Positions 6,226-55,373 of a DNA stretch of 64,000 bases are shown here, in pieces (the stretch's first letter is position 1; each line of letters starts with the position of its first letter). A program made the position numbers and the translations under genes. The DNA lies in the IMG/VR virus record IMGVR_UViG_3300050120_000230, positions 1-64,000 of that record. The stretch is one strand, 5' to 3'. Below the pieces are notes generated by a model. The model was given only the letters and a program-made list of their open reading frames with translations, did not search any database and was not told the DNA's origin.

Positions 6226-7260
6226 ATGATGAACAGTGTTGTCAAACCCGCGAAGTTTCTGATCGCTATAGTGACGCTTTGCTTCGCGACGATGGCGGCT
6301 GCTCAGAACACTCCGAGGGCTACAGCGTCACAAGGACAGTGGGCTCACTATTCGTCGGCTCAACCATTGATCGCCGTGGCGCCCACGCCAGAGGTCCCCA
6401 AGCCCGTTCCGGTGGTAGTTCCCGCACCTCACATCCAAAATCCCATCGAGCACGCGTTGCAAGTGGCCTTGGACGATTATCGCGCTGGCAAAACCAGTGA
6501 CGACGTGATCGCACGATATGGCGGAACACCATCCGCTTATGGCCACATGCTGGAATTGAACGTCGCCCGCGCACGGGCGCTGCCTTCGGTGTTCCCAGAA
6601 CGCTACGTCGTGGTGAACATCCCCTCGCAAACACTTGATCTTTACGTCGATGGCAAACGTGCCTTGACCATGCGGGTCATCACTGGTCGGCCGGATGCTC
6701 CTACGCCCACGATGGTGACCAACATCACCACGGCCATCTACAATCCCTACTGGAACGTCCCGTGGGAAATGGTGCGTGACACCTATTCGAAACGGGCCAT
6801 GGCCAACTCGCATTACCTGAAGTTGATGCACATGGAAGCACTCGACGGTTGGGGCGCGGACGCCAAGGTCATCCCAGAATCACAGGTTCCGTGGAAGGAC
6901 GTGGCGGCGGGGACGATCTACCAACGCGTTCGGCAGCGTCCGGGTGACGATAACATGATGGGCATCGTCAAGTTCGAGTTGGCGGACAACAGCAAGGGCA
7001 TCTATCTTCACGACACCCCGTTGCGGAAAAACTTCAACGGCACATGGGTTGTGCTTCACGCGATGAGTTCCGGTTGCATCCGTCTCTTCGACGCCAAGAC
7101 ACTCGCCAATGCCTTGATGGGAACGCAGCCCGCGTTTGCCGACACGGAACATCGCGTTCTGCTGACGAAGCCGGTGCCGATTTTCATCACCTATTTCACA
7201 GCGATGCCCAGTGAAACAGGATTGGTCTTCTACCATGACGGCTACGACGCCGATAAATAA
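6226..7260 (+). CDS. L,D-transpeptidase (YkuD domain, YcbB-like), secreted
   Basis: Signal peptide; VVVNIPSQTL, VITGRP..PTP, NPYWNVP, RQRPG..NMMGIVKF, catalytic IYLHDTP...SSGCIRL. Confidence 0.9.
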   Translation: MMNSVVKPAKFLIAIVTLCFATMAAAQNTPRATASQGQWAHYSSAQPLIAVAPTPEVPKPVPVVVPAPHIQNPIEHALQVALDDYRAGKTSDDVIARYGGTPSAYGHMLELNVARARALPSVFPERYVVVNIPSQTLDLYVDGKRALTMRVITGRPDAPTPTMVTNITTAIYNPYWNVPWEMVRDTYSKRAMANSHYLKLMHMEALDGWGADAKVIPESQVPWKDVAAGTIYQRVRQRPGDDNMMGIVKFELADNSKGIYLHDTPLRKNFNGTWVVLHAMSSGCIRLFDAKTLANALMGTQPAFADTEHRVLLTKPVPIFITYFTAMPSETGLVFYHDGYDADK

Positions 7261-7263
7261 TCA

Positions 7264-7737
7264 GTGCGCGAATACATCGACATTCTGGCCGAAGCTCAGA
7301 GCCAAATCCCACCCGAGCTTGCTGCCCAAATCCTTTCAGACCGGCTTTGCAAGCACGGGGTGAAACTGGCGCCGAGCGCACGTCTGTGGCGTGGCGAGGG
7401 TTCTGAAGGCGGAAGCGGGTTCGCCACCTATGGCCGAGGGCTCTACTTCACCGCTGATCGCAAAGTCGCGGCCGAATATGCCGGAGACGATGGCGAGATC
7501 GTCGAAATCGCTCGGGCCTATCTTCCCGACAATGCGCTGCGTTTCGACACCACAAATGATTTCCAGATTTGGAAGCAGAGGGCTTACACGCTGCTGGGCT
7601 TCAGAGGCCCGCAGGAGTTCGCAGCCGCATACGATGATCTTGGCGTTTTCATCCGCACCCTTGATCCGACCATCGACGGCATCCAGATGTTCACGGGCAA
7701 AGACTCCGTCTTCGTCCTCTACGGAATGGACGAGTAA
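7264..7737 (+). CDS. ADP-ribosyltransferase-like late protein with N-terminal tag
   Basis: LWRGE...YGRGLYFTADRKVAAEYA resembles the ART core; TAAATA 4 nt upstream. Confidence 0.55.
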   Translation: MREYIDILAEAQSQIPPELAAQILSDRLCKHGVKLAPSARLWRGEGSEGGSGFATYGRGLYFTADRKVAAEYAGDDGEIVEIARAYLPDNALRFDTTNDFQIWKQRAYTLLGFRGPQEFAAAYDDLGVFIRTLDPTIDGIQMFTGKDSVFVLYGMDE

Positions 7738-7782
7738 TATCCTTGACCGGATAGCGTTCCGTGGGATCATGCCTCAACAGTT

Positions 7783-8052
7783 ATGGAGGCTCCTATGTGG
7801 TTCATGAAGCCGAAGGTCGTGCCGGTTCCTCCGCGTCGAGTTGAACTGCGTCCCGAAGAGAAGACCGTCATCGCGAAGTTCGCCGAAGGCGATGAAGACA
7901 TGAAGCCCCACGCCATTGCGTGCTATCGTCGCAACATCGGCCGGGTGCCGAAGACGACTGCCGAGATGGGCTTCATGGCTGAAATCGATACGCGTTCGCC
8001 CGATCTGGCGATGCGTTCGTATTTCCGCCGCCGGGTGCTCGGCCAAGCATGA
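7783..8052 (+). CDS. Hypothetical protein
   Basis: TTGACC promoter-like sequence upstream; GGAGG suggests a start at ATG 7795. Confidence 0.6.
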   Translation: MEAPMWFMKPKVVPVPPRRVELRPEEKTVIAKFAEGDEDMKPHAIACYRRNIGRVPKTTAEMGFMAEIDTRSPDLAMRSYFRRRVLGQA

Positions 8053-8548: not shown

Positions 8549-8602
8549 ATCTCGGGCGAGGCGGGTCATATAAATATGAAGTCTGTTCGGAGCCCCCGCC
8601 CC

Positions 8603-9160
8603 ATGGAAATGCGTCGCCTCATTGACCTGTCCACCCCGAGAAAACTCACCGAGAGTGAGCAACGAACCATTTTGAAACCCAAGCGCGGTAAAAATGGTCT
8701 TTTCATCGAAGTGAAAGATGCCAGCGCGGAGCGCGAGACGATTGAAAATCACAATCGCGAACGGTTCGCCAATCACTTCCACTACGCAGACAAATTCGCA
8801 GGGAATACGAACACCTTCGATGCCGAGGGCGACTACAACTGCGGGCGCTGCAACCAAGCGGACGACAAATATTGCCTGCTGCTGGATATCAAGTCCATCG
8901 ACCCGGCGGCTGGTAGCTGCGGAGATTGGGAGAACATCGACGCGGGCGATCCCGAGATGATGCTCAATGAGAAATCCCCGGAAGAAGCCGCCTATGGTGT
9001 TGCCGCGAACGGCAAGGGATTCGGATGCCATCGGTGCCCGTTCGCCAGTCGCGCGTTCGAACCCGACAGCCGAGGCCGGGACAAATATTGCGGCAAGGGC
9101 GATTTCCGGGTGTTCGACAATGCGTGCTGCTCTCTGAATGGCGCCGAACTCAAGAAATAA
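8603..9160 (+). CDS. Cys-rich protein with two HiPIP-like CxxC...C...C modules
   Basis: CGRC..C..IDPAAGSCGDW and CHRC..C..CC; TATAAATA at 8569-8576. Start uncertain (8576, 8603 or 8609). Confidence 0.6.
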   Translation: MEMRRLIDLSTPRKLTESEQRTILKPKRGKNGLFIEVKDASAERETIENHNRERFANHFHYADKFAGNTNTFDAEGDYNCGRCNQADDKYCLLLDIKSIDPAAGSCGDWENIDAGDPEMMLNEKSPEEAAYGVAANGKGFGCHRCPFASRAFEPDSRGRDKYCGKGDFRVFDNACCSLNGAELKK

Positions 9161-15952: not shown

Positions 15953-15978
15953 GGAAACCCCTTTTCATAAATACTCGT

Positions 15979-16473
15979 ATGCGCGAGTTCATGAATATCG
16001 TCAACGAAGGTCTGGCCGGAGAGGACGAGATGCTCAGTGAGGCAACACCGCGAAACTTCGGAAAATGGGCGGCGAGCATGGCCGGAGCAGCCGCGCTGGC
16101 GGCGGGGCTCAGTGGCTGCTCTGACACAACGTCTGGCAGTCCTACACCGGTTGTGAGCAAGGCAGATTGCGAGAGTGATGGCGGTGCCGGGTGCGAAACG
16201 GAAGCCGACAGTCCAGAAGGCGCCGAGGCTATCGACTATAAGAACGAGTGGAACAGGCGCCTTTGCCTTGCACAAGGTGGTGACTGGGACTCAAGTTCCA
16301 TGATACCCACCAAAATTGCCGATCACCCGCTCCGTGGGATGTGTAGCAATATAAGACAAAGAGATGCTTGTGCCGATGTTGGGGCCTGTCCCGAACTGGA
16401 TGATAAGGGCATGAAACAATGGGACAGGGATTGGTGGAAAGCGCACCCGAATCTCATCCAACCGAAACCGTGA
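15979..16473 (+). CDS. Late protein with N-terminal tag, internal lipobox and Cys-rich body
   Basis: TAAATA 5 nt upstream; MREFMNIVNE...LSEA...AAALAAGLSGC. Confidence 0.65.
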   Translation: MREFMNIVNEGLAGEDEMLSEATPRNFGKWAASMAGAAALAAGLSGCSDTTSGSPTPVVSKADCESDGGAGCETEADSPEGAEAIDYKNEWNRRLCLAQGGDWDSSSMIPTKIADHPLRGMCSNIRQRDACADVGACPELDDKGMKQWDRDWWKAHPNLIQPKP

Positions 16474-17183: not shown

Positions 17184-17707
17184 TTCGTTCCACGATTTGG
17201 CTCAAGGCCAACCCACGTCAAAATTGTTTCCAGCCCGGCCCAGAAGCCGATCCCGTCGAGGATCGGGTTCAGGATGTTCGTCAACGGGCAGTAGCGACGA
17301 TCCTCATGCCTGTGATGACCATTGTGGTGGTTCGGAGACTGGATGATCCCGATCTCCTGCAACATCAAAAATCTGCCCGGCCGGTGCGTGAGAACATGCA
17401 CTTCGTTCAACAGCAGGCCACCCAAAGTGGCGAAGAACCATACGAACGACGGACCCGCGAGACCAAACCAAACGGCGCTCACGATGCTGACGGCAACCCA
17501 CGTTTCGATATTGCGATAGATCAGAGAGTTCCCGAGGAAAGACTGTGGATCAGAATGATGTAGGCGATTGGCCTTGATGACCATCGGCCCGATCAGCGGC
17601 ATGTCTTCTCGTCCCACACGGTCTTCCCACCAGTGAAAAACGCCACCCGCAAAATCTGCGATGAGCCAACCGAGCAATGATTGGCCAAAAATTCGGAAAT
17701 CGTCCAT
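17180..17707 (-). CDS. CarF/TMEM189 (Kua-B) family lipid desaturase
   Basis: ADFAGGVFHWWED, RLHH, NEVHVLTH, LQEIGIIQSPNHHNGHH..YC histidine pattern; TM helices. Confidence 0.85.
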   Translation of the reverse strand: MDDFRIFGQSLLGWLIADFAGGVFHWWEDRVGREDMPLIGPMVIKANRLHHSDPQSFLGNSLIYRNIETWVAVSIVSAVWFGLAGPSFVWFFATLGGLLLNEVHVLTHRPGRFLMLQEIGIIQSPNHHNGHHRHEDRRYCPLTNILNPILDGIGFWAGLETILTWVGLEPNRGTK

Positions 17708-17723
17708 GTCTCCTATTTATGGG

Positions 17724-20711: not shown

Positions 20712-21968
20712 TTAGAGCTTCATGATGTAGGCGAGGGCGTAGAACGCGGGCCGATTGTCGAACGACAATGCGTGGCTGTGCGTCGTCGCGTTCGCGGCGG
20801 TCACGACGTGAGTGTGAACCCCGTCAGCAGAAATTGGGTGGGTGTGGGCAACACTGTTGCCGATAGGATCGGTCGCCGTCAGCGCGACGCCTGTGACGCC
20901 AGCGGTGCTTCCAGAAGCATAGCCAAAACCGGTGCCGATGCGCGGCACGCCGCCAGAGGATGCGGCCAGACCGTGGGTGTGGGGCGGAAGTTCAGCGACC
21001 GACAACGAATGGCCGCCGGTGCCGCCGTGATTGTGCCCACCAGCCGTGGCGGCGGTGATGACGTGAGTGTGGCCGCCGTCTTGAGCAGTTGAAATGTTGA
21101 GCGTGTTGTTGCCGCCGCTGAGACCATCGGTCATGTCGCCGAAGCCAGACGATGCGACGACGAAACGTCCGCGCAGATTGGGGGTGCTGTTGGTGCCGTC
21201 GCAGATCGCCCAGCCGCCGGGGACAGCCGTCGAGTTACCGCTCCACATCACGATGACGCCGCGCGGGATCAGATCGAATCCACCTTCTTTGAGCTTACCG
21301 GAACCCGTGACGTTCACGTTGGCATTGGCTACCAACAGGGCGCCGGTCATCGTGCCACCAGTGTTCTGCACCGAGTTGGCGAGATTGGCCGGGACATAAC
21401 CCAACGCGGCGATCACCGCAGCTTGGTCAGCCGTCGAAGCCGGGGAAGGATTAGCAGCCGAGGAAATGCGGCCGGAACCATCCACGACGATGATCGGGGC
21501 AAAGTACGTGCCAGCCGCAACGCCGGTGTTGGATAGTGAAACGGGGATCGAGATGTTGGCGGTGCCGTCGAAGGGCGCGGTGCCAGTCGCATCGCCGGAC
21601 ACGGCGATATTCACGGCATTGGCGAGGCCAACCGCAAGTCCAGTGCCGCCGACGTTGTAGAAGCCTTGCGGATTGCTGCCGATAGTCGGCTGGAAGACCT
21701 TCATCGTGTTGGAGGTCTTGTCGTACCAGAGTTGGCCGATCAGCGCGTTCGCCGGAGCCGAATCGTCAGCGAAGTTTTCCAGAAGATGAACGAAGTTTTC
21801 GGAGGTCGCCTCGGAATACGAACGCGCACCACGACGCAGAAGTTGGAGAGAAGTCAGGGACGTATCAACAATCGAGTTGGACACTTGTCCGACATCCAGC
21901 ACCAAAGTGCCATCGCCGCCAAGAACAACGTCGTTTGTCAGCCTGATTTCATAACCGTTCTGGGCCAT
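20712..21968 (-). CDS. Tail fibre with collar and His-rich tip
   Basis: NFVHLLENFA..GQLWYD, collar PRGVIVMWSG..P.GWAICDG..TPNLRGRF, HxH tip motifs, PAFYALAYIMK. Confidence 0.85.
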   Translation of the reverse strand: MAQNGYEIRLTNDVVLGGDGTLVLDVGQVSNSIVDTSLTSLQLLRRGARSYSEATSENFVHLLENFADDSAPANALIGQLWYDKTSNTMKVFQPTIGSNPQGFYNVGGTGLAVGLANAVNIAVSGDATGTAPFDGTANISIPVSLSNTGVAAGTYFAPIIVVDGSGRISSAANPSPASTADQAAVIAALGYVPANLANSVQNTGGTMTGALLVANANVNVTGSGKLKEGGFDLIPRGVIVMWSGNSTAVPGGWAICDGTNSTPNLRGRFVVASSGFGDMTDGLSGGNNTLNISTAQDGGHTHVITAATAGGHNHGGTGGHSLSVAELPPHTHGLAASSGGVPRIGTGFGYASGSTAGVTGVALTATDPIGNSVAHTHPISADGVHTHVVTAANATTHSHALSFDNRPAFYALAYIMKL

Positions 21969-21999
21969 CGGGGGTTACTTTCCAGCGAGTGTCCAGTAT

Positions 22000-28653: not shown

Positions 28654-28693
28654 GATCCTATTTATGAGCCGCCATAACTGCGGGTTTTACTCA

Positions 28694-29446: not shown

Positions 29447-29453
29447 CCTCTAT

Positions 29454-38200: not shown

Positions 38201-39751
38201 GGCGCCGGACGGAAGCGGGGTGTCGGGGTTCGACACGACGCGATAGATGAGGTTGTTCAGCGCGGGTTCGGTCGAGTTGGATTGATGCACGAACAGGCGG
38301 TCGTTTGGTTGCAGAACATAACCATCGTCAACGACCACAGAGCCCACGATGGTGCCGTCCGGCATGTGTGCGAAGAACTGCCCGTTGACCCGCGATAGCG
38401 CGATCTTACCGGTGTCCCAGACGTTGTCGTCGTTGGGGTTCAGGTCCCAATTGTCGATGACATCGACGGTCGAGTTCGAGAGCACGCCTTGCACGTCCGC
38501 AAGACGGCGGGTGCCATAGTTGAACAGTTCGATGTTCGGAAGGAACTCGATGATCGGCCGGGTGGCGCGACGAGAGGCGAAATCTTGACCGGTCCAATCG
38601 AGAGAAGCTTCGTGGACCCAGAGGTTGCGGCGTGTCCACGGGCTATCGTCGCGCGAACGGCGGTCGATCACCACGTATTGGGGCGTAGAACCGCCTGTGT
38701 CGCCCGAGTAGTCGGGTGTTAGATTGATTGCTTGCCCAACGCCGTCGAGGATGAAAGGCCGCCCAGTGGCCACGGTAGTGCCGATTCCGTCGATCAGACG
38801 CACGCGCGAACCCGATGTCGCCATCTGGGCATTGATCGCAGGTTCCCACTTCAGGATGTCGAGCAGGAACCGCACCGATGCGGTGTGTGCGGTGACACAG
38901 GTCCAGACCATCGGGCTGCCGTGCTCATCTTCCGCGAAGGTGAGTTCGCCCACTTCGTAGGTGCGCGGCAGGTTCACATAATCGTTGCTGTCGTTGAGAC
39001 CCGGAAACACCGATTGCCATGCCAAGAACGGCGAGTAATCCAGCGTGACCAGACCGTCGAGAACGGCGGTCATATCGCCATAGCGAATGGTTTCGATGTA
39101 GTCGCCCACCGACAGGCCAGAGGTCGAGATGACCGCATCGCCGTGCGTGGTGACGTTGTTCGCGACTGGCACACCATTGACGAGGACGACCGGCACTTCA
39201 CCTTCGCCGACGAACACGGGATCGGCGGGCGGCAGAGCGTAGGCCGTGGTGGCGGCGTTGCCGTCGTAAACGTAGACCGCGCGTTCAGCGCGCAGGTTGA
39301 TGATCGAGTTCGCAGTCTCGTCGTCGGTGAGCGAACCCATCCAGACGTATTGCAGATAGTTGTTCAGCTTATCGAGATCGACCGGCGGCGCCCACGAGTA
39401 GTAGTCGCCTTCGAACATACGGCTGTGGTTGTTCACGGCCGCGCCCTGCGAACGCAGGTAGTTGATGAGATCGTCGTAGCACAGGCTGTCCGTCAGAACG
39501 CCACCTGTGTTCGACGAGATCATCGCGGGTTCAAGCTGATAGGCAGTGCGCGACGGAGACGGTTCGGCAAGGTAAAAATCCTTGTCCGGGTTGTAGTAAA
39601 CGGGCTTTTGGCCGACGTAACCACTAATCGCTTCCGACTCACCCGGCTGGAACAGTTGATCGACTGTCGCAGCAAAGAAGTTCTTCAGCGTATCCGTTTG
39701 CAGGACAGCCGGAAGCTGGGTGATTAGACGACGCTTGGGAGTCTTGGCCAT
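32264..39751 (-). CDS. Giant virion structural protein (2495 aa)
   Basis: Long clean ORF in the baseplate cluster with TAAATA 4 nt upstream; internal W.P..Y..G..V.Y CBM-like motif. Confidence 0.85.
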   Translation of the reverse strand: MAKTPKRRLITQLPAVLQTDTLKNFFAATVDQLFQPGESEAISGYVGQKPVYYNPDKDFYLAEPSPSRTAYQLEPAMISSNTGGVLTDSLCYDDLINYLRSQGAAVNNHSRMFEGDYYSWAPPVDLDKLNNYLQYVWMGSLTDDETANSIINLRAERAVYVYDGNAATTAYALPPADPVFVGEGEVPVVLVNGVPVANNVTTHGDAVISTSGLSVGDYIETIRYGDMTAVLDGLVTLDYSPFLAWQSVFPGLNDSNDYVNLPRTYEVGELTFAEDEHGSPMVWTCVTAHTASVRFLLDILKWEPAINAQMATSGSRVRLIDGIGTTVATGRPFILDGVGQAINLTPDYSGDTGGSTPQYVVIDRRSRDDSPWTRRNLWVHEASLDWTGQDFASRRATRPIIEFLPNIELFNYGTRRLADVQGVLSNSTVDVIDNWDLNPNDDNVWDTGKIALSRVNGQFFAHMPDGTIVGSVVVDDGYVLQPNDRLFVHQSNSTEPALNNLIYRVVSNPDTPLPSGATADVIELVLEGQPVRGDIIRVGHPTDSVFTDPVEYWFDGIEWQIAQTGASNPLFMLYDSSENALNDDNVYQGTDFAGSRLFGYKIGTGTPDAVLGFPIIVNSFAQPLFEIDPVVNRVTYVGGTVSGFYYHHFLSETDNGSFSNNWFPVATPSTQALVNGVYEIPLNLQANPGNLQVDTISRNEWFDHFSEIMTQQVGFTGHPYSVNNWRDTAKVLGNGNKILQHRSPLLKTMLISANANYDLPSSLRYAEQEYSRFRNKFVQTILDFRAAGTLVDTDAPELWVTAILNQLRLNKTSDFPFSGSTMAGGQFFIPPTPASMGLASVSQPVIYVDNSFSSPVTLVRGHDGSAVPAFGDMRDPIMLALEQRIFDNINARFKTEARPLFDLQHYVATKFVTATDLNYTSAEIDAMYSPYFQRWAQINRLDYRANNSYDPSNPFTWNFSSSVDRESNPVPGNWRGIYILYYDTFRPHVAPWEMLGFVDKPTWWQGEYGPAPYTSGNTKLWEDLRDGLIRGGPRAGTDVRYARADLDLVLPVDEEGNLLDPIQCGIIPDAPTYQQATAPWQAGDIGPVEALWRLSQSFCFAQAQIGFLIKPARFVEQGWDTTNLIQDDTGQWIYGPTGNRPLDSTIYVHGELDLTGTKVVAEGVQQWISDYMVSRGQAPSNFGSAIRGLTVKLAHKVAGFTTSDNLRVLADNFGLLPAEDVDVQLYHSPSTREEVYSGVVIEWTGQGWRVIGYDTRTPFFTTIPGLENGPKGLISLASTPEPVINTWRPNTYYPSGTNVAYQSTVYSAIKGHTSSAVFDQTFWSVVSAIPQQAPRVVTYGRGGPDTQQVAYGTVFATFQQVADFLLSYERYLVAHGWVFDQVNPDTQEPLDWSLAVREFLAWSQVNWQPGNFIALSPGASGLKFNTDHGMVLDVLSPINGVYGMLDRAGMPIKRENVVVNRIDGEAMLLSKNSDVFGSRVNIGEIEHVLIFNNTTIFNDIIYAPLFNLRQPRLRLIGNRAMDWNGRLDIPGYVLIDNVIKSNFDKAATDLLTMWDIEKADNATLRDHARHSIGYDSRDYLASLVLSEVEQFEFYQGLIHQKGAPGAFNKLLRSDFIEQSRDLQFFEEWAIKIDEYGAIQNRNRVAFLFGQSTVKRDPQYIEFRVTDANSPVVSQQPDWIELADSTITGVDSKWVERPNNPLSTFPQRPNAKPLPGDLPVSGYVRLTEVDHTVFSVDDVLTVYDANAGVTLPLGEVVWVHNNLESREISQVSATDWYELGIALGSGHWDGTSNARTLANDQTTVLDDGTRVFQSTAGEAPYISSDDSFVPVPGETYNVSFSVRKTLRETNGIKAFVRPAFDAFKADGSDAPALGTKSGFGFTKQTDMIDTSNWVLDRWYDVECEWTVPISPPFTEARSRLRVNRSYPDDLVTTPYSDAIFEVMSQEMVVSKRPVWDALKVYNLSADGNTNTVANVVTNAEDITLSNTTTRIYTVNPHGLVSTDRGLFIVIDGDTFSDPLLQGVQRVWDLGDNWIDILTTGKKGYEFVSKGQIGPALRVLRTIHFTNLDEFNSFKNRVGVLDGDIAYVDGSPWRVYQRGSITEILDDYADGEVQPDNQITIADDNNRRTDTFKFWNVVRSQPTRMDGARIASSLIYNLKTKVTTTSLEPEPLSLDHLTVVTPLTGIIPGRAKAEIDYIVDYDPANYNVVPSSFDEDGTPSFSSTGQAVGPWGPAQVGRVWWDLKTVRFLETETDNVSFGLTSSSRYNQEVQYRIGHWGQIAPSTSVDVYEWTRSTLHPLEYEAAVLTDTTGTIDGVVYNSENPSWVEAEESVGGVIATYFYFWVKNRLNIPANVGRQMSVATVSNFITNPMIEDQPWIAPVMPNGVLVGGVNPFLDDTFDESTESASSGTVLQIEVSDDDEGVVHDQWLLLRPQDERSLPPEWLWEKLRDSLVGFDQTKMLLPPVLVLPSAVTSVNKPPVWYTGPDADDVPIDPSLR

Positions 39752-39755
39752 ACTG

Positions 39756-39761
39756 TATTTA
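39756..39761 (-). promoter_or_regulatory. Late promoter TAAATA (representative copy)
   Basis: Same hexamer at +7254, +8571, +15968, -17714, -21997, -24678, -24690, -28659, -29451, -46018, -47886, -49993, +52401, +54764 and +56657, each before a gene; resembles T4 TATAAATA. Confidence 0.85.
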
Positions 39762-39843
39762 CTAGCTCGATAAAGGTCGTATATTTAGCTTGACGAAAAA
39801 CACGTTCATGAGAAACTTCAGCTAACAACGCAGGAGGTTTTCG

Positions 39844-45595: not shown

Positions 45596-45997
45596 TTACT
45601 GGAAGCCGAGTTCGGCATCTTGGCGAGCATCAAAGTCAACGTAGAAAGTCTCCGACACGGAGAATGGATCGTAATTCAGAGTCATTTCGACCCGAATACC
45701 AGACCCCATCTGGAAGACTTGAACATCGTTGACGCTAACTCGACTATCCATTTCACAAATTCTCATGGTTTCCGCGACGATGAGGTCACGAATTCCAGTC
45801 GTAAGGGGCTCCATCATGTAATCCCAGATTTTGCACCCAAAATCAGGACGCATTACCCGTTCACCCACCCGAGTATTGAAGTGGTTCATCAAGTCCCGCT
45901 TGATGAGTTCAATATCGTAGTAGGTCCAGTCTTTCGTCAGGGACTCACCAGCGGTGCTGAACCCTTTGAAAATATTTTGACTATCACCGGTGGCCAT
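45596..45997 (-). CDS. Baseplate wedge subunit gp25-like
   Basis: DIELIKRDLMNHFNTRVGERVMRPDFGC..EP, DSRV. Confidence 0.9.
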   Translation of the reverse strand: MATGDSQNIFKGFSTAGESLTKDWTYYDIELIKRDLMNHFNTRVGERVMRPDFGCKIWDYMMEPLTTGIRDLIVAETMRICEMDSRVSVNDVQVFQMGSGIRVEMTLNYDPFSVSETFYVDFDARQDAELGFQ

Positions 45998-46060
45998 GAG
46001 AAACCTTACTTTAGATGTATTTATTTGAGCAATAACTCCCGCCTTTATTGAGACGAACCT

Positions 46061-46575: not shown

Positions 46576-47880
46576 TTAAGACTTCGGCGGAAGACGATCT
46601 TTGATGTCTTCGATTTCAGCGCGCAGTTCTTTGACGGCTTCGATCAACAATGCCGCGAGGTTGCCGTAGGCGACCGACAGCAAGCCGTTCGTTTGTTCGT
46701 GAACGACTTGCGGCATGATTTCCTGCATTTCTTGCGCGATAACACCGATTTGCTCGGGGTTGCCAGCAATATCAGCGCGCTTGAAGTAAGTGCCGCGCAG
46801 CATATCGACCTTGTCGAGAGCATTCTCGATAGTGCGGATGTCATACTTGATGGTCACGTCGGACAAGCTGGTGATTTCACCCACGGCCGTGATCTGGCCG
46901 CCGACGAACAGATCACCGCCAATGTTGGCATTGTCTGCGACGATCAAATTGTTGTTGATCGTCAGTTGGCCCGACATCGTGTCGCCGGTCTTCTGAACAG
47001 CGTTGGCGTCAGAGCCGGTGGCATTGGCCAACAGGGCGGACAGGCCGACGACGTTGTTTGCGACGGTGTAGACATTGGAGACACCACCGTGGTCGGTGAT
47101 GCTCGTGTTCGAGATAGCGTATGCGAAATCGGAGCGGATCATGGCATCGTTGGCGATGCGATCCGTGATTTCCTGATTGAGTGCATTGGCCGTGAACGTT
47201 GCGGTCGTCAGCGCATTCGCGGCATCGGCGGAAGCATTTGCTGAATCGGCCACGGCGTTGTCGATCAAGCTGCCGAACATACCCACGGTGTTCGCGAGGT
47301 CGTTCAAGGCGTCTTGGTTGACGAAAATGTTGTCGATCTCAGCTTGCAGCGCGGTATCTGCGTTCGCACGCAGGGTTTCTTCGGTGCTCAGTGCACCCGC
47401 AAGTGACGACAGAGCCGAGTTGGCGATGGCAAACTGTCCAGTGACGTAGCTCAACGGCACGGCATCGGTAGGCAGAGTCGGAGAATAGCCCAGTGTCAGC
47501 TTCGTGGTGATCGTCATGGTTGAGAGCGTGACGAGACCGGCCGCATCCTTAAAAATGCCCGAACGCCAGCCAGAACCATTGTAGAATTGAATGCCGGTAG
47601 ACGGATCGTAGCGGATCATGCCGGTGAGCGGCGTGCCGGGATCACCGATGGGCAAAACCAGTCCGTTGTCCTTGTAGGACCCGGTCAGGATGACATCGGC
47701 GCCGGACATCGTGGCCGCCAGTGCAACGATGCTGTTCGCATCGCTGTGCATGATTTGCAGACGTTCGACAGCGGTTTTGATGATCGCGAAGTTGTCGCGG
47801 AACTGCTGTGACGACTGATCCACGTTCGGCAGGGGGAAACCTGCGCTGAAAACAATATTTTGGCCGCTGTCGATACCCAT
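46576..47880 (-). CDS. Tail fibre with C-terminal intramolecular chaperone (peptidase S74) domain
   Basis: SDVTIKYDI..IENALDKV..LRG, IGVIAQE, LSVAYGNLAALLIEAVKEL; KTGDTMSG. Confidence 0.85.
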   Translation of the reverse strand: MGIDSGQNIVFSAGFPLPNVDQSSQQFRDNFAIIKTAVERLQIMHSDANSIVALAATMSGADVILTGSYKDNGLVLPIGDPGTPLTGMIRYDPSTGIQFYNGSGWRSGIFKDAAGLVTLSTMTITTKLTLGYSPTLPTDAVPLSYVTGQFAIANSALSSLAGALSTEETLRANADTALQAEIDNIFVNQDALNDLANTVGMFGSLIDNAVADSANASADAANALTTATFTANALNQEITDRIANDAMIRSDFAYAISNTSITDHGGVSNVYTVANNVVGLSALLANATGSDANAVQKTGDTMSGQLTINNNLIVADNANIGGDLFVGGQITAVGEITSLSDVTIKYDIRTIENALDKVDMLRGTYFKRADIAGNPEQIGVIAQEMQEIMPQVVHEQTNGLLSVAYGNLAALLIEAVKELRAEIEDIKDRLPPKS

Positions 47881-47902
47881 GAGGATATTTATCCGCGACG
47901 GG

Positions 47903-49987
47903 TCAGGTGCTCGTGGTGTTGAACTTCGCTCTATTCATGCGGAAGAACTTGCCTTCGGTGAACACCAGCGTGTCGAGACGAACCGTGTTCTGATCGAACG
48001 TGGTAGTTGCACCATCAAACGTCGTCTGGATGCCCATGGTCTGGAAAATCATGAAATATTGGTCGAACTCAACTTCGTGACCATCGCGAACTGGATCGCT
48101 GCTGTCAGTTGCCCGTGCGGCCGGAACTGAACGCAGGGAGATACGGTCGAGCACGCCTTGCCCGGTTCCCGGTTGCAGATAAGCCAGCACCACAGCCGGA
48201 ATGTAGCCTAGAGCCGTGGACGCATCGGTTCCGGTCTGCGGGCACGTCATCCACAGCGGGAGGTTCTCAGGGCCTTTGAGGCTCATGTCGTGAGTTTCAG
48301 TCGGATCGAGCGCCGGGAAGCCCAATGCATTCACGAACTCGGCGCGGATGTTGTTGATGCTGGACGGATGAATGAACGTCGTATTCGACGGCGTAGATTG
48401 CGGGTAGCGAACAGGAGACTCGACGGGCACACCGTCTGTCACGGTCCAACCGCCAGCGTGTTCCAGAGGATCAACCACTTCGCGATAGAGCACCTCGTAA
48501 ATCACCACGCCGTCGATCTTGGCAAATGCGATCTTGTGATCTCCCAGTCGAAGTTTGACCGGACCATCGAGATTTGACGCACGAACTGTCTGCTCAAGCA
48601 CGGAAGCATTTCCTTGCAGGCCACCGGCCAAGAAAATGCTCATGCTCGAAGTCACACCGGCCGGGCCGTAGTTCGGGTCCTGCTGGCGGAAATATTCTTC
48701 TGCGTTGATGACCGACGAATAGTAGGTCGTCAGCGGTGTGGTCGTCTTCACACGGACCTTGAACGTCATGTTGAAGAAGGTCTCAACGCTGTAGCGGCTC
48801 AGAACCTTGATCGAGAATTGGCGATCTTGGAACGTGTCGCTCACCTGTGCGCGGATCGTGAACGTAAACGTCTGGTCAGCCGGGATATGGGCCAAAATGC
48901 CTTCGATGTCGCCGGTTGCCGTATTCAACGACAAGCCGGGCGGCAAGGGAGAATTGTTGGAGGCCAGTGAATAGACCACAGGTTCGCCGGTGGTGCAGGT
49001 TGCCCGCACACCAATCGGAAACGCTTGTGCTTCGGGCAATGTGGCCAGCAGCCCGGCAGGCGTGACCCACAGGATGAAGCGCAGCGGCTCCAAGGCGCTG
49101 AAGGGCGGCGAAATCTCGATCATGAACGTCTTCGGCGTGGCGCCGGAACCCGTCGTGATCGGGTTGCCCCGGTTGTCGAGCATTTCAATCGTGAAGAAGT
49201 ATTTCCCAAGCTGGGCATCGGCCGCGATGGTGCCGCTCACGACTCCCGTGTGCGGATCGACGCTCAAGCCCGGAGGAAGCGTGTTGAACGGCGAAACGAT
49301 GTCGGTCGCACCGATGAACGTTTCGACAACCAACGTAGGCGGCAGGCCGCCCGGTTGAGAGATTGCGATCTGATATACAAAGGGCGTTCCACGGGTCGTT
49401 GCACCAATTGGAACGAAATCAAACGCCGATGGTTGTGCTTGTTGAGTCTGCTCCGGCGGCAGGCTGCCCCATGACGGGGGCGCCGCTTGAACCGTAGCCG
49501 GGTCAGCTTCGATGGAGAAACTGCGATCTCGCGAGTAGGTTCCATCGGAAATACGCACGGCAAAGCTATAGGTCAGAGACGGACCATCTGTCGGAAGCAC
49601 ACCGACTTTACCCGAAATCTCACCCGTCGAAGACAACGACAGGCCGGGCGGCAAATTGTCGTGCAGCATGGAATACGAGATGGGCTCCGACGTGGTCAGG
49701 TCAACGACATCGGTGTTGCTCAGAGCATTATGAAACTCAATCGCATTGGCGATCAAGGTATAGGCAGTATTTGCCAAAGACTGACTGTTGAGTTGCACCT
49801 CGGTGAGGAAGGACACACTTGGGCCAATGTGAACGATGGTGTTACCAAATGCTAGGATAGCATCGGAATCATCGCCCATGAACTTAGCTTTACGGGAGGC
49901 CGCAAGCGTTTGGGACACCAAATCGTTCTCGGTAACGGGAGTCAAAGCGCCCGCAAGTGTCGTCCAAACAGGGTAAAAGGTGACCAT
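47903..49987 (-). CDS. Virion protein with putative Ig repeats
   Basis: Three LPPGLS(L/V) units; TAAATA 5 nt upstream. Confidence 0.8.
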   Translation of the reverse strand: MVTFYPVWTTLAGALTPVTENDLVSQTLAASRKAKFMGDDSDAILAFGNTIVHIGPSVSFLTEVQLNSQSLANTAYTLIANAIEFHNALSNTDVVDLTTSEPISYSMLHDNLPPGLSLSSTGEISGKVGVLPTDGPSLTYSFAVRISDGTYSRDRSFSIEADPATVQAAPPSWGSLPPEQTQQAQPSAFDFVPIGATTRGTPFVYQIAISQPGGLPPTLVVETFIGATDIVSPFNTLPPGLSVDPHTGVVSGTIAADAQLGKYFFTIEMLDNRGNPITTGSGATPKTFMIEISPPFSALEPLRFILWVTPAGLLATLPEAQAFPIGVRATCTTGEPVVYSLASNNSPLPPGLSLNTATGDIEGILAHIPADQTFTFTIRAQVSDTFQDRQFSIKVLSRYSVETFFNMTFKVRVKTTTPLTTYYSSVINAEEYFRQQDPNYGPAGVTSSMSIFLAGGLQGNASVLEQTVRASNLDGPVKLRLGDHKIAFAKIDGVVIYEVLYREVVDPLEHAGGWTVTDGVPVESPVRYPQSTPSNTTFIHPSSINNIRAEFVNALGFPALDPTETHDMSLKGPENLPLWMTCPQTGTDASTALGYIPAVVLAYLQPGTGQGVLDRISLRSVPAARATDSSDPVRDGHEVEFDQYFMIFQTMGIQTTFDGATTTFDQNTVRLDTLVFTEGKFFRMNRAKFNTTST

Positions 49988-50220
49988 GCCCTTATTTATG
50001 GAACTGGAAAAATCCTCGTATTCCTAATTTTGGTTTCCCACTTGCTCGTAAACCAAATTAGGCGTAAACAGTCCCGTTGCTCCAAGGTAACTCCATCTTG
50101 GATGGCTATAATGAATGCATTTTCACCACTCGCTTTATCCAAGATGGAAAACCCCGCTGTGGGGCTTTCTCGGCACCCCCGATGCCTAAAGGCACGGGCA
50201 AGAAAGGATGAGGTTCAGCG

Positions 50221-52400: not shown

Positions 52401-52406
52401 TAAATA
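52401..52406 (+). promoter_or_regulatory. Late promoter TAAATA driving the leader peptide-tRNA unit
   Basis: Same motif and 5-nt spacing as at other late genes. Confidence 0.75.
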
Positions 52407-52411
52407 GAGGC

Positions 52412-52459
52412 ATGTCCCACTCGGTGCACATTTCGAGACGCAACAGGCGAAGAGCCTAA
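52412..52459 (+). CDS. Candidate leader peptide MSHSVHISRRNRRRA
   Basis: TAAATA 5 nt upstream of the ATG; Arg codons AGA CGC (AAC) AGG CGA AGA. Confidence 0.65.
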   Translation: MSHSVHISRRNRRRA

Positions 52460-52487
52460 CTTGCTTGACGCCGCAAGGCGTCCTCAT

Positions 52488-52559
52488 GTGCCCGTAGTTC
52501 AGTGGAAGAACGCCTTTTTTCTAAATTGGTCGTCGCAGGTTCGAACCCTGCCGGGCATT
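52488..52559 (+). tRNA. tRNA-Arg(UCU), imperfect anticodon stem
   Basis: Acceptor GTGCCCG/CGGGCAT, D arm GTTC/GAAC, T arm GCAGG-TTCGAAC-CCTGC, anticodon TCT at 52520-52522; two U-U mismatches; no encoded CCA. Confidence 0.8.
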
Positions 52560-52563
52560 CAAT

Positions 52564-52639
52564 GATCCTTTAGCTCAACAGGAAGAGCGCATCTTTCCTA
52601 AAGATGAGGTTGCTGGTTCGAGCCCAGCAAGGGTCGCCA
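52564..52639 (+). tRNA. tRNA-Arg(CCU)
   Basis: Full cloverleaf, anticodon arm CATCT-TTCCTAA-AGATG, A20, discriminator G, encoded CCA. Confidence 0.95.
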
Positions 52640-52849: not shown

Positions 52850-52996
52850 AGTCGAAGGGATTCCAACCACCACGAATACGGTCGCGCTCGGCGTCCTCGT
52901 GATTGTCCTGACAACCTATGCACCGGCTATCGACCAGCAAGTCTGGATCGAAAGTTTCGAAATCACAATCGACACAGTAGTAAGTCAGACCGAGCA

Positions 52997-53317
52997 TCAG
53001 ACGCTTTCGAGCTTGACCCCAAGGATCATGGCCATGGCCTGCATGATGTCGCCGCCATAGCAATGACCGCTACCGTAGCCACCATCACCGAGCTTGGGAG
53101 AGAACGTGTCGCTCGAACTAGCGAGTTCGTTCTTCTTCTCCCACTTGTCGTAGTTCTTCCAGAGCTTTTCCTGCTCACGCTCCGGCACGTCCGTATCGTC
53201 GATGTCGAAAGGATTTTCTGACGGATGCACTCGGTAGAGCCGCCAGTAGTCGTTATCGATGATGGCGACGCAACCGGGGTTGTCCTTCAGAATCTTGATG
53301 AGATTCCGCTTAGCCAT
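52997..53317 (-). CDS. Hypothetical protein
   Basis: Starts MAKRNLIKILKDNPGC; overlaps the peptidase stop. Confidence 0.65.
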   Translation of the reverse strand: MAKRNLIKILKDNPGCVAIIDNDYWRLYRVHPSENPFDIDDTDVPEREQEKLWKNYDKWEKKNELASSSDTFSPKLGDGGYGSGHCYGGDIMQAMAMILGVKLESV

Positions 53318-54620
53318 TGAGTGCAGCCGCCACCAACGAGGTATAGTCCTTGGGGGCGGCGTTCCCGGCGACGACCACGGTGGTCTTGCCGGTGACCAGT
53401 TGCTTCGCGGCGGCGATGATATCGTCCTTGGTGAGCGAGGTGTATTTCTGCACCGTTTCGCCCATCGTGATGACATTGCCGTCGTTGAAGAACATGTCGG
53501 TGGCCGCTTGGATGCCGACCGAACGAGTCGCTTCGGAGCGCATGACGATCTGGCGGACGACTTGGTTCTTGGCTCGCGTGAGATCGGTGTCGTCGAGTTC
53601 GCCGTTCGCGACCTTCTTCAGTTCGCCAACCGCGACGGTCAGGAACTCATCGACGTTCTCGGCGGCGGCCGATCCGCCGATCAGGAAAATGCTCCCATCG
53701 GCTTGCGGCGACATTCCGCAGCTAACCGAGTAGCAGAGGCCGCGCTTCTCGCGAACGTTCTGGAAGAGCGGCGAGGACATACCACTGCCGAGAACGTCGC
53801 TCAGCAGATCATAGGCAGCGAAATTGGCGTCGTAGTTGCCCGGCGCCGGGAGGCCGACGTAGAGATGGGCCTGTTCGAAACGACTGTCCTGCACGACGGT
53901 CTCGCCGCCGACGTAGTTCGAGGGCACCGAGGGGATCACGGTCTTGCCTTCGACATCGCTGAAACGCTTGGTGACTTCCGCCAAGAACTCGGCGTGGTCC
54001 ACGGCGCCGACTGCCAGCACGATCATGTTGTTCGCGTGGTAGTGCTTGTCCATGTAGGCGTCGAGGGCTGCCTTGTCGAAGCCCCGGACGTTTTCCTTCG
54101 GGCCGAGGATCGGGCGGCCCAGAGGTTGGTTCGGATAGGCCGTGCGGACCATCGCCTCGTAGGCGATGTCATGGATGTCGTCGTTGCTCTCGTTGATCTC
54201 TTCGACGACCACGCCCTGTTCGCGCTTCAGTTCTTCAGCCGGGAACGTGGAGTTCTTCAGAACGTCCGAGAGAATGTCCAGCGCCGGGACGATGTGATCC
54301 GGCAGGCCCATGACGTAGTAGGCGGTCATGTTGGAACTGGTGAAGGCATTGGGCGCCGCGCCGAGGTATTCCACCTCCAAGCTGATCTGCTTGGTGTTGC
54401 GGCTGGTCGTGCCCTTGAAGGCCATGTGTTCGAGGAAGTGAGAGATGCCGTTCTCCGCTTCGGTCTCGGAACGCGAGCCCACGCGGTTGAAAACGGACAC
54501 CATCACGGTGTGGATCGGACGCTTGACTGTGGCCACCCTCAACCCGTTGGCCAAGGTGGTGATCTCGACTGCTTCTGCGGCCGATTCGGATGCGGTGTGA
54601 TCCAGACTGAAATTGTGCAC
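53310..54620 (-). CDS. M16 (pitrilysin/MPP-like) zinc peptidase
   Basis: GSRSE...GISHFLEHMAFKGT (HxxEH), NAFTS, LGSGMSSPLFQNVREKRGLCY; AAGGAG SD. Confidence 0.95.
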   Translation of the reverse strand: MHNFSLDHTASESAAEAVEITTLANGLRVATVKRPIHTVMVSVFNRVGSRSETEAENGISHFLEHMAFKGTTSRNTKQISLEVEYLGAAPNAFTSSNMTAYYVMGLPDHIVPALDILSDVLKNSTFPAEELKREQGVVVEEINESNDDIHDIAYEAMVRTAYPNQPLGRPILGPKENVRGFDKAALDAYMDKHYHANNMIVLAVGAVDHAEFLAEVTKRFSDVEGKTVIPSVPSNYVGGETVVQDSRFEQAHLYVGLPAPGNYDANFAAYDLLSDVLGSGMSSPLFQNVREKRGLCYSVSCGMSPQADGSIFLIGGSAAAENVDEFLTVAVGELKKVANGELDDTDLTRAKNQVVRQIVMRSEATRSVGIQAATDMFFNDGNVITMGETVQKYTSLTKDDIIAAAKQLVTGKTTVVVAGNAAPKDYTSLVAAALNG

Positions 54621-54773
54621 GAAAACTCCTTTAACTGAATGCTCCCAAGGTAGGACGGTTAACCATTTTGGTCAACCAAATTATTTCCGCGCCAAATCCA
54701 TATCTGGATCAGAGATTAAGTCCTACCACCGAAGCGGTATTCGTCAACAAAAAGCGCCCCGCATAAATAAGGG

Positions 54774-55373
54774 ATGCCTCTCGATCTCGAAAAAATCCAA
54801 GACAGCCCTCACCTTCTGGACATCTTGCTTCAGATGGAAGACGTGCTCGACTCGCTCGACGTTTACGTCTTCAAGAACTGGTATCTCGGCGAGATCGCCG
54901 AGGGGCCGACTGTTCGCCGTTACTGGCTCGATTTCACGCTGAAATATCCTTACGATAAGATGCCCGACCCGAAAGCGGCCCTGCGGCTGCTCAAGCACGG
55001 CATCCGTGTGGACTTCTGGAAGGCGAAACTCGAAGACGGCGAGTTCAAAGACGCCGATCAGATGGAGAAAGAAGCCACGGCCGAAGAAGGCACTGAATCC
55101 GATCCGGCCAAAGACCCGGTGGAAGACACAGTCTGGATGGTCCGCATCAGCATCCCGCGCCGCCTTGCCGCGCAGATGTCCTCCGAAGAGATGGACTTCT
55201 ACGATGACGAAGTGGACGTGGACGACGTTGAAGACGCCAAGGACACCGGCATCGACGACGAGAGCGCCTACATGTCGGGTGAAGATGGTCAGCAGGCTCC
55301 GGGTGACCCGAATGCCCCGCCGCCGGGATCGCCTGACGATCAGCAGCAACCGCCGCCCGGAGGCCCCGCCTAA
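54774..55373 (+). CDS. Acidic late hypothetical protein
   Basis: TAAATA 4 nt upstream; YVFKNW..GE...GP...RYW, MPDP. Confidence 0.75.
   Translation: MPLDLEKIQDSPHLLDILLQMEDVLDSLDVYVFKNWYLGEIAEGPTVRRYWLDFTLKYPYDKMPDPKAALRLLKHGIRVDFWKAKLEDGEFKDADQMEKEATAEEGTESDPAKDPVEDTVWMVRISIPRRLAAQMSSEEMDFYDDEVDVDDVEDAKDTGIDDESAYMSGEDGQQAPGDPNAPPPGSPDDQQQPPPGGPA

What the first reader, a model, noticed from the sequence alone, without database searches (positions are those of the whole stretch)
7254..54776. Late genes appear leaderless: TAAATA lies 4-6 nt before the start codon
Seen: the gap from TAAATA to the start codon is 4 (7264), 5 (15979), 6 (17707), 5 (28653), 4 (29446), 4 (39751), 5 (47880), 5 (49987), 5 (52412) and 4 (54774) nt. 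Established: T4 late transcription starts a few nt after TATAAATA. Inference: transcripts begin at or next to the AUG, whereas early genes here use AGGAG SD sites, so late mRNAs could use a separate initiation route.
Basis: partly seen in the sequence, partly recalled or inferred. Interest (0 to 1): 0.6.

Follow-up and report, generated by a model that had tools for sequence, protein, structure and literature searches.

The report
Phage promoter box fused to start codons
In this uncultivated giant phage and its closest relatives, a T4-late-type promoter box (TAAATA) sits 4-5 bases before the ATG of about one gene in ten. Those messages probably start at the start codon itself and have no ribosome-binding leader, but no RNA data exist to prove it.

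Summary
All ten spacings are correct. TAAATA occurs 20 times in the window against 4.2 expected.

The window is the first 64 kb of a 415-kb contig, G000, a Rak2/Atu_ph07-like giant myophage from peat. Across G000, 48 of 140 boxes have ATG exactly 4 or 5 nt downstream; the reversed pattern occurs 0 times. 96% of boxes lie outside coding calls. Six related giant phage genomes share the arrangement. T4, Atu_ph07, Phosso, PBECO4 and one other relative do not.

The box behaves as a promoter, not a ribosome site:
- It also lies 20-37 nt upstream of genes that carry an ordinary Shine-Dalgarno (SD) site.
- Orthologues keep the box but swap "no leader" for an SD leader.
- It marks heads of divergent units, down to 20-26 bp between opposed ATGs.
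- Every relative that has the arrangement and is at least 97% complete encodes a gp55-type sigma.

With T4 geometry, a 5-nt gap puts +1 on the A of ATG. The base before it is a pyrimidine in 81 of 94 cases.

Leaderless transcripts are therefore the best reading. The "late = leaderless, early = SD" split is not supported, and timing and transcription start sites (TSSs) are unmapped.

Two side findings: a shared N-terminus like the T4 capsid-targeting sequence, and mini-ORFs rich in cognate codons ahead of tRNA genes.

The parts
7254..7266 (+). TAAATA box, 4-nt gap, GTG start of ORF 7264-7737. The N-terminus is VREYIDILAE, like the shared targeting-type N-terminus.
   Evidence: coding score 0.24 per codon. 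GTG at this gap is at background frequency genome-wide.
15968..15981 (+). TAAATA box, 5-nt gap, ATG of gene 15979-16473. The N-terminus is MREFMNIVNE.
17705..17719 (-). TAAATA box, 6-nt gap, ATG 17707 of gene 17180-17707 (lipid desaturase-like).
28651..28664 (-). TAAATA box, 5-nt gap, ATG 28653 of gene 24706-28653 (1315-aa virion structural protein).
29444..29456 (-). TAAATA box, 4-nt gap, ATG 29446 of gene 28694-29446 (glycine-rich, tail-fibre-assembly-like). The TAA of the box is also the stop codon of the upstream gene 29454-32267.
39749..39787 (-). Two TAAATA boxes (39756-39761 and 39782-39787). The proximal one is 4 nt before ATG 39751 of the 2495-aa gene 32264-39751, which heads a unit divergent from gene 39844-40302.
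   Evidence: The box and gap 4/5 are kept in orthologues L003, L005, L040, L010-L012 and L042.
47878..47891 (-). TAAATA box, 5-nt gap, ATG 47880 of tail-fibre gene 46576-47880.
   Evidence: Orthologues in relatives lack the box here.
49985..49998 (-). TAAATA box, 5-nt gap, ATG 49987 of gene 47903-49987 (694 aa, Ig-like domains), which heads a unit divergent from gene 50221-51123.
   Evidence: The box is kept in 8 orthologues: gap 4/5 in six, a 19-21-nt SD leader in two.
52401..52639 (+). TAAATA box, 5-nt gap, then a 15-codon Arg-rich mini-ORF (52412-52459), a hairpin, tRNA-Arg(tct) at 52488-52560 and tRNA-Arg(cct) at 52564-52639.
54764..54776 (+). TAAATA box, 4-nt gap, ATG of gene 54774-55373 (virion structural protein, phrog_12928), which heads a unit divergent from gene 53310-54620.
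   Evidence: orthologue with box and gap 5 in L006/L008.
8569..8605 (+). The only full TATAAATA. It is of the leadered type: 26 nt containing GGAG before ATG 8603.
45995..46023 (-). TAAATA box of the leadered type: 20 nt containing AAGG before ATG 45997 of the baseplate operon (45596-45997, 41851-45582).
21966..22002 (-). TAAATA box of the leadered type, 28 nt before ATG 21968 (gene 20712-21968).
62557..62591 (-). TAAATA box of the leadered type, 26 nt containing AAAGGA before ATG 62559.

Best explanation
[C/A]TAAATA is the -10-like box of a T4-late-type promoter. It is read by host RNA polymerase carrying a phage gp55-family sigma.

In about 48 genes of this contig, 9 of them in the window, the box has been placed 4-5 nt before the ATG. 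Transcription would then start at, or within a base or two of, the A of the start codon. The mRNA has no 5' leader and no Shine-Dalgarno site, so it must be translated by the leaderless route, in which the ribosome binds a 5'-terminal AUG.

The same promoter also drives genes with ordinary 15-32-nt SD leaders, so leaderlessness belongs to a subset of genes and not to a whole temporal class.

Shown here: the motif, its spacing, its placement outside genes, its conservation in relatives, the lack of SD sites, and the sigma gene in relatives.

Inferred: the transcription start position, the translation route and the late timing.
For: 1. Spacing. 48 boxes have ATG at gap 4 or 5, against 0 for the reversed pattern. 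Only ATG is enriched.

2. A signal outside genes. 135 of 140 boxes (96%) lie outside crude coding calls, against 54% for all A/T-only hexamers.

3. No conserved -35 region. Only [C/A] before the box is conserved, as in T4 late promoters.

4. Geometry. In the T4 P23 complex, adenines sit at -12, -9 and -8. The octamer therefore spans -13..-6, and the sixth base after it is +1, which is the A of ATG at gap 5. The base before the ATG in gap-5 sites is a pyrimidine in 23/28 (G000, this contig), 24/27 (G007) and 34/39 (G002). This is the pattern expected at a start site.

5. Not a ribosome site.
- The same box lies 20-37 nt upstream of SD-led genes.
- A same-strand box lies 81-367 nt upstream of 7 of 10 tRNA clusters.
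- For gene 49987, eight orthologues keep the box; six have gap 4/5 and two have a 19-21-nt leader with AGGAG or AAGGA.

6. Heads of transcription units.
- 24 of 48 such genes have a divergent upstream neighbour, against 22% of all genes.
- Eight verified pairs in relatives have only 20-26 bp between opposed ATGs, filled by two back-to-back boxes.
- The window scan at 44-58 kb found no excess of sigma-70-like promoters and none upstream of these genes.

7. SD sites. 1-3 of 40 such starts have an SD site, against 143/368 other genes and 57/368 decoys.

8. Clade trait.
- Present: G001 55 sites vs 0 control, G002 72 vs 7, G003 44 vs 0, G004 52 vs 7, G005 71 vs 6, G007 103 vs 0.
- Absent: T4 10 vs 12, Atu_ph07 17 vs 26, PBECO4 5 vs 27, Phosso 4 vs 2, G006 31 vs 29.

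9. Sigma. All four relatives with the arrangement that were searched and are at least 97% complete encode a gp55-family protein, E 1e-19 to 1e-21. A similar ATAAATA late promoter and a gp55-like sigma were predicted for the Rak2-like phage CBB (PMC5259590).

10. Function. Products of the leaderless-type genes are virion proteins, tail fibres and proteins with a capsid-targeting-like N-terminus.

11. Precedent for the inference. A -10-like signal about 10-12 bp before the start codon is the accepted mark of leaderless genes in bacteria (PMC3160421).
Against: - No transcription start has been mapped. The only run that holds this DNA is a DNA run.
- No gp55, gp45 or related family was found in G000 itself. 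The contig is only 72% complete and also lacks the neighbours of gp55 seen in relatives, so this is inconclusive.
- At gap 4, T4 geometry would put +1 on the T of ATG. The polymerase would have to start one base earlier, and the base before the ATG there is mostly G, so a 1-2-nt leader is possible.
- The SD-leadered sites show no base signature that would locate +1 independently.
- 21 of 48 sites have a co-directional ORF ending within 40 nt, 10 of them using the TAA of the box as their stop codon. Translational coupling could contribute at those sites.
- The box also precedes DNA polymerase and RNR genes, which are not late genes in T4.
- The host is unknown, so its ability to translate leaderless mRNA is unknown.
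Confidence: 0.65

Rival explanations
1. TAAATA acts in the RNA. It would be an A/U-rich element just before the AUG that replaces the SD site (for example by binding ribosomal protein S1 or a phage factor), on transcripts that start further upstream.
For: These starts lack SD sites. The clade encodes its own ribosomal protein bS21. 21 of 48 sites lie inside co-directional gene arrays, where read-through transcripts would carry the box as RNA.
Against: - The same box lies 20-37 nt upstream of genes that have their own SD site, and upstream of tRNA clusters.
- Orthologues keep the box while inserting an SD leader.
- The sites are enriched at heads of divergent units, with 20-26 bp between opposed ATGs in relatives.
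- A gap fixed at 4-5 nt, with a pyrimidine before the A, fits start-site choice better than ribosome binding.
- bS21 is also present in relatives without the arrangement.
Confidence: 0.12
2. TAAATA is a cleavage site for a host or phage endoribonuclease. The enzyme would trim longer primary transcripts just ahead of the AUG, as T4 RegB does at GGAG.
For: A/U-rich single-stranded sites are typical RNase targets. Processing would also give near-leaderless ends. The motif is strand-specific.
Against: - No such nuclease was looked for or found.
- It does not explain the match to the T4 late box, the co-occurrence with gp55 in relatives, or the back-to-back boxes between divergent genes, which still need promoters.
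- It does not explain the avoidance of the motif on both strands of coding DNA.
Confidence: 0.06
3. The pattern is a by-product. It would arise from a TAA stop codon of the upstream gene followed by a coupled restart, from base composition, or from a duplicated cassette shared by paralogues.
For: 10 of 48 boxes supply the stop codon of the upstream gene. Many gap-4 sites share the same bases around the ATG and a conserved N-terminus, so some copies may descend from one cassette.
Against: - 27 of 48 sites have no co-directional ORF ending nearby.
- 40 of 48 products are singletons by BLASTP.
- The reversed pattern occurs 0 times, and no shuffle reaches the motif count.
- The arrangement recurs in six other genomes of 45-60% GC, at unrelated genes.
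Confidence: 0.03

Closest known systems
Bacteriophage T4 late promoters (TATAAATA, gp55/gp33/gp45-dependent)
   Same: An A/T box at the -10 position with no -35 element. It precedes virion genes. A gp55-family sigma is encoded by the complete relatives.
   Different: The core is [C/A]TAAATA. The full octamer occurs once in the window. T4 shows no excess of ATG 4-5 nt after the box, 10 sites against 12 control. Here about a third of the boxes abut an ATG. gp45 and gp33 were not found (gp33 was not searched).
Predicted ATAAATA late promoter of Rak2-like jumbo phages (CBB, GAP32; PMC5259590)
   Same: Nearly the same motif, upstream of structural genes, in the same broad phage group, with a gp55-like sigma and no gp33 or gp45 detected.
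   Different: That paper reports no fusion to start codons. The Rak2-like phage PBECO4 has 5 sites against 27 control.
Leaderless ('TA-led') genes of Actinobacteria, Deinococcus and others (Zheng et al. 2011, PMC3160421)
   Same: A -10-like signal 10-12 bp before the start codon, no SD site, and gain or loss between orthologues.
   Different: Here the signal is a phage sigma's box, not the host TANNNT. It belongs to a virus and concerns a defined subset of genes.
Single leaderless phage genes such as lambda cI from PRM (own knowledge; Brock et al. 2008 is cited)
   Same: Translation from a 5'-terminal AUG.
   Different: Those are isolated regulatory genes. Here there are 48-103 genes per genome, mostly virion-related.
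Leader-peptide attenuators (thrL, hisL, trpL; own knowledge)
   Same: Mini-ORFs of 5-17 codons rich in the cognate amino acid, followed by hairpins.
   Different: The downstream genes are tRNA genes, not biosynthetic operons. No U-run terminator was seen, there is no Rfam match, and the ORFs are of the leaderless type.

Membership tests
T4-type late promoter | 8-bp TATAAATA box about one helical turn upstream of the start site | tested here: inconclusive
   The 6-bp core TAAATA is invariant by construction. The base before it is C or A in 43 of 47 sites. The full octamer occurs once in the window. The start site is not mapped.
T4-type late promoter | No conserved -35 element | tested here: met
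   There is almost no information content at -30..-3 relative to the box.
T4-type late promoter | Phage-encoded gp55 sigma | tested here: inconclusive
   Not found in G000. The contig is 72% complete, and the gp55 neighbourhood of relatives is also absent from it. It was found in G001, G002, G004 and G005 at E 1e-19 to 1e-21.
T4-type late promoter | gp45 sliding clamp and gp33 co-activator | tested here: inconclusive
   T4 gp45 and phrog_223 gave no match in G000. gp33 was not searched. CBB authors also found neither.
T4-type late promoter | Activity late in infection, coupled to replication | not testable with these tools
   No RNA run holds this DNA.
Leaderless (TA-led) genes | -10-like signal about 10-12 bp upstream of the start codon | tested here: met
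   The first T of the box is 10-11 nt before the A of ATG in 48 sites. The criterion comes from PMC3160421.
Leaderless (TA-led) genes | No Shine-Dalgarno site | tested here: met
   1-3 of 40 starts have one, against 143 of 368 other genes.
Leaderless (TA-led) genes | Mapped 5' end at the start codon | not testable with these tools
   No RNA data are available.
T4 capsid targeting sequence | Short N-terminal peptide shared by otherwise unrelated proteins, resembling MKTYQEFIAE of T4 IPII/IPIII | tested here: met
   About 17-23 of the 48 products start with MR-[ED]-[FLW]-I-N-L-V-E-like peptides, and 40 of the 48 are BLASTP singletons. Relatives have the same peptides, including MKTYADILVE.
T4 capsid targeting sequence | Removal by the prohead protease and packaging into the capsid | not testable with these tools
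   Pfam PF03420 gave no match, but the control genomes gave none either.
Leader-peptide attenuator | Short ORF enriched in codons of the regulated amino acid or tRNA | tested here: met
   29 cognate residues of 86, against 10.7 under re-pairing. Only 1 of 5040 pairings reaches the observed value.
Leader-peptide attenuator | Alternative terminator and antiterminator hairpins | tested here: inconclusive
   Two hairpins are kept between G000 and L003 with compensatory changes, z -3.2 in L003. There is no U-run, and the other leaders fold no better than shuffles.

The most novel reading that the evidence does not exclude
The clade has turned its late promoter into a combined transcription-and-translation start. 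It uses this in two unreported ways.

(a) A portable cassette of box, ATG and capsid-targeting-like peptide heads dozens of unrelated genes. These would be proteins loaded into the capsid.

(b) Leaderless mini-ORFs rich in the cognate codons sit in front of phage tRNA genes (Arg, Thr, Lys, His, Glu, Ile). They would act as ribosome-stalling sensors that tune transcription of each tRNA to its own supply.
Probability: 0.35. Interest if true: 0.8.

Novelty: new variant of a known kind. Interest (0 to 1): 0.6.

Why it matters
If the start sites are confirmed, this is a phage lineage in which one 6-7-bp box specifies both where RNA starts and where protein starts, for 50-100 genes per genome. I found no paper linking gp55-type late transcription with leaderless mRNA.

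It would have three consequences:
- Gene callers that rely on ribosome-binding sites will misplace or miss these starts in giant phage genomes.
- The host must translate leaderless mRNA well, which helps host prediction.
- Late phage protein synthesis could escape controls that act on SD-dependent initiation.

The ortholog series, with the box kept and the leader gained or lost, offers a natural experiment on how genes move between the two initiation routes.

The mini-ORFs ahead of tRNA genes would be a new use of leader-peptide sensing.

Tried and rejected
- RNA evidence.
- gp55 and gp45 in G000. T4 proteins and phrog_234, phrog_12791 and phrog_223 gave nothing. ORFs around gp55 in relatives have no match in G000. 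I read this as the missing 28% of the genome, not as absence.
- Independent location of +1 from the SD-leadered boxes. No clear base signature was found.
- Sigma-70-like promoters and terminators at 44-58 kb. There is no excess over shuffles and none is upstream of the leaderless-type genes.
- Translational coupling as the general cause. Rejected, because 27 of 48 sites have no co-directional ORF ending nearby.
- Paralogy as the cause. Rejected, because 40 of 48 products are singletons.
- Phage bS21 as a factor specific to the trait. All genomes with the arrangement have it, but so do Phosso, Atu_ph07 and G006, which lack the arrangement. It does not discriminate.
- Prohead protease PF03420. 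No match anywhere, controls included, so uninformative.
- Rfam. Only the two tRNAs are found in the window, and nothing in the mini-ORF leader.
- Megablast of the baseplate gene against isolate phages. No match; the nearest isolate is 45% identical at protein level.
- Host identity was not determined.

Full report
**What the window is.** The window is the first 64 kb of a 415,409-bp linear IMG/VR virus contig, here called G000. It has 55% GC and CheckV rates it 72% complete. The only sequencing run that holds it is a DNA run from a peat metagenome.

Its genes include a baseplate wedge protein, tail fibres and virion proteins. The wedge protein is 45% identical to that of Sinorhizobium phage Phosso, 42% to Agrobacterium phage Atu_ph07 and 35-37% to Rak2-like phages. 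G000 is therefore an uncultivated giant myophage, distantly T4-like.

**The observation.**
- TAAATA occurs 20 times in the window against 4.2 expected, and no shuffle reaches 20.
- The full T4 octamer occurs once.
- Across the contig, 140 boxes exist. The next ATG is 4 nt away in 19-20 cases and 5 nt away in 28, against 0-4 for any other gap.
- The reversed pattern occurs 0 times. GTG, TTG and control triplets are at background.
- TAAATA is the most enriched hexamer at that offset from ATGs, ahead of AGGAGG.
- 44 of 47 such ATGs open ORFs of at least 60 aa.
- The extended consensus is [C/A]TAAATA, with no conserved -35 region.

**Promoter or ribosome signal?** Several independent lines point to a transcription signal.
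1. 135 of 140 boxes lie outside my crude coding calls (96%). All A/T-only hexamers together give 54%. The motif is avoided inside genes.
2. A second class of boxes lies 20-37 nt upstream of an ATG with a GGAG-type SD site in between. Its genes include tail sheath, large terminase, a collagen-like tail fibre and two phrog_8578 proteins. They also include DNA polymerase and the large subunit of ribonucleotide reductase.
3. A same-strand box lies 81-367 nt upstream of 7 of 10 tRNA clusters.
4. For gene 49987, eight orthologues in relatives keep the box. Six have gap 4 or 5. Two (L018, L042) have a 19-21-nt leader with AGGAG or AAGGA. The 2495-aa gene 39751 keeps the box and gap 4/5 in seven relatives.
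5. Half of the leaderless-type genes (24 of 48) have a divergent upstream neighbour, against 22% of all genes. In the window these are 39751, 49987 and 54774.
6. In relatives G002, G003 and G007 I verified eight divergent pairs of ORFs, each of at least 118 aa. Their ATGs are only 20-26 bp apart, and the spacer is two back-to-back boxes. Both genes need a promoter, and there is no room for leaders.
7. A sigma-70-type scan of 44-58 kb finds fewer sites than shuffles and none upstream of these genes.

**Geometry.** T4 late promoters are an 8-bp TATA box one helical turn upstream of the start site, without a -35 element (PMC2988020). In the cryo-EM open complex on P23, the flipped adenines are at -12, -9 and -8 (PMC7892883). 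This places the octamer at -13..-6 and +1 at the sixth base after it.
- At gap 5 that base is the A of ATG.
- The base before the ATG at gap 5 is a pyrimidine in 23/28 (G000), 24/27 (G007) and 34/39 (G002, first 300 kb). This is the usual preference at a start site (own knowledge).
- At gap 4 the A is the fifth base and the preceding base is mostly G. The start there may be at the A or one to two bases earlier. This is the weakest point of the geometry.

**Translation.** Only 1-3 of 40 leaderless-type starts have an SD core at a usable distance. Among other genes 143 of 368 do, and among mid-gene decoys 57 of 368. SD-dependent and SD-free initiation therefore coexist. A -10-like signal 10-12 bp before the start codon is the accepted mark of leaderless genes in bacteria (PMC3160421).

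**Distribution among relatives.** Counts are sites against the reversed-pattern control.

| Genome | Sites | Control |
|---|---|---|
| G001 (578 kb) | 55 | 0 |
| G002 (517 kb, 45% GC) | 72 | 7 |
| G003 | 44 | 0 |
| G004 | 52 | 7 |
| G005 (608 kb) | 71 | 6 |
| G007 (500 kb) | 103 | 0 |
| T4 | 10 | 12 |
| Atu_ph07 | 17 | 26 |
| PBECO4 | 5 | 27 |
| Phosso | 4 | 2 |
| G006 | 31 | 29 |

- G007 favours gap 4 (75 against 27) and G002 favours gap 5 (39 against 6).
- All four relatives with the arrangement that were searched and are at least 97% complete encode a gp55-family protein.
- G000 does not show one. It also lacks the genes that flank gp55 in relatives, so the gene probably lies in the missing part.
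- For the Rak2-like phage CBB, an ATAAATA late promoter and a gp55-like sigma had been predicted, without gp33 or gp45 (PMC5259590).
- I found no paper that links gp55-type promoters with leaderless mRNA.

**Verdict on the interpretation.** The leaderless reading is the best-supported one, at about 0.65.
- The box is not confined to leaderless genes.
- SD sites are not confined to early genes.
- 'Late' is plausible for the virion genes but is unproven. The box before DNA polymerase and RNR genes suggests it may serve a broader middle-to-late programme.

**Side finding 1: a shared N-terminus.** About 17-23 of the 48 products begin with a shared peptide such as MREFINLLEQ, MRDFINLVEN or MREWINLVER. 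The rest of each protein is unrelated: 40 of 48 are BLASTP singletons.
- T4 IPII and IPIII begin MKTYQEFIAE. This is the capsid targeting sequence that loads diverse internal proteins into the prohead (PMC3012670).
- Relatives show the same peptides, including MKTYADILVE.
- This explains the frequent ATG-CG-N-GA after gap-4 boxes.
- It suggests a box-ATG-targeting-peptide cassette heading many putative packaged proteins, which would fit late expression.
- The GTG start at 7264 encodes VREYIDILAE.

**Side finding 2: mini-ORFs before tRNA genes.** The site at 52412 opens a 15-codon ORF, MSHSVHISRRNRRRA. Its Arg codons include AGA twice and AGG once. It lies 28 nt before tRNA-Arg(tct) and tRNA-Arg(cct).
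- G000 has a second case: MRMTVTTRTTTTG before tRNA-Thr(cgt).
- G007 has five cases: Lys, His, Glu, Ile plus Thr, and one whose last codon is ATA before tRNA-Ile(tat).
- G001 has two, Thr and Arg. L003 and L042 have Arg versions.
- Re-pairing the seven peptides of G000 and G007 with the seven tRNA sets gives 10.7 cognate residues on average. The observed value is 29, and only the true pairing, 1 of 5040, reaches it.
- All these mini-ORFs are gap 5; L042 is gap 6.
- The Arg leader folds into two hairpins kept in L003 with compensatory changes, but there is no U-run.
- There is no Rfam match and I found no paper on the subject.
- This looks like leader-peptide sensing applied to tRNA genes. It also indicates that an ATG 5 nt after the box is really translated.

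**Limits.**
- My gene calls are a simple codon-score model, so counts that depend on them are approximate.
- Start sites, timing, host and the translation route are inferred, not observed.

Noticed in passing
window 52401-52639; G000 268984-269153; also G007, G001, L003, L005, L042: Leaderless-type mini-ORFs of 5-17 codons, rich in the amino acid of the tRNA gene(s) just downstream (Arg, Thr, Lys, His, Glu, Ile). Only the true pairing of peptide and tRNA, 1 of 5040, reaches the observed number of cognate residues. They may be attenuator-like sensors of tRNA supply.
   Followed up: partly
window 7264, 15979; G000 99136, 153485, 248514, 261543 and about 15 more; relatives L110-L117: Unrelated proteins share an N-terminus of the type MR-[ED]-[FLW]-I-N-L-V-E. 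It resembles the T4 capsid targeting sequence MKTYQEFIAE of IPII/IPIII. These may be proteins packaged into the capsid.
   Followed up: partly
G000 whole contig: The palindrome TTTAAA does not occur at all in 415 kb, while hexamers of similar composition occur 19-35 times. This may be avoidance of a restriction site.
   Followed up: no
G000 52488-380730: ARAGORN finds 52 tRNA genes, mostly in clusters at 159-172 kb, 297 kb and 379-381 kb. One has anticodon CTA, which reads the amber stop codon, at 373385-373472.
   Followed up: no
G000 395294-395449 (+); also G001, G002, G004, G005, G006, G007, Phosso, Atu_ph07: A ribosomal protein bS21 homologue is encoded by the phage and by nearly all its large relatives, in two copies in G005 and G007. 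It is absent from PBECO4. Its presence does not track the leaderless arrangement.
   Followed up: yes
window 17180-17707 (-): A lipid desaturase / fatty-acid hydroxylase-like gene (Pfam PF10520, E 2e-30) sits behind a box with a 6-nt gap. This is an unusual metabolic gene for a phage.
   Followed up: no
G000 267401-267430: Back-to-back boxes 5 bp apart. The left gene has ATG at gap 4. The right box is followed at gap 5 by GTG-CGT, a possible second GTG start of the leaderless type.
   Followed up: no
window 24678-24695 and 39756-39787 (-): Tandem TAAATA boxes 12 and 26 nt apart on the same strand, upstream of one gene. They may be double promoters.
   Followed up: no
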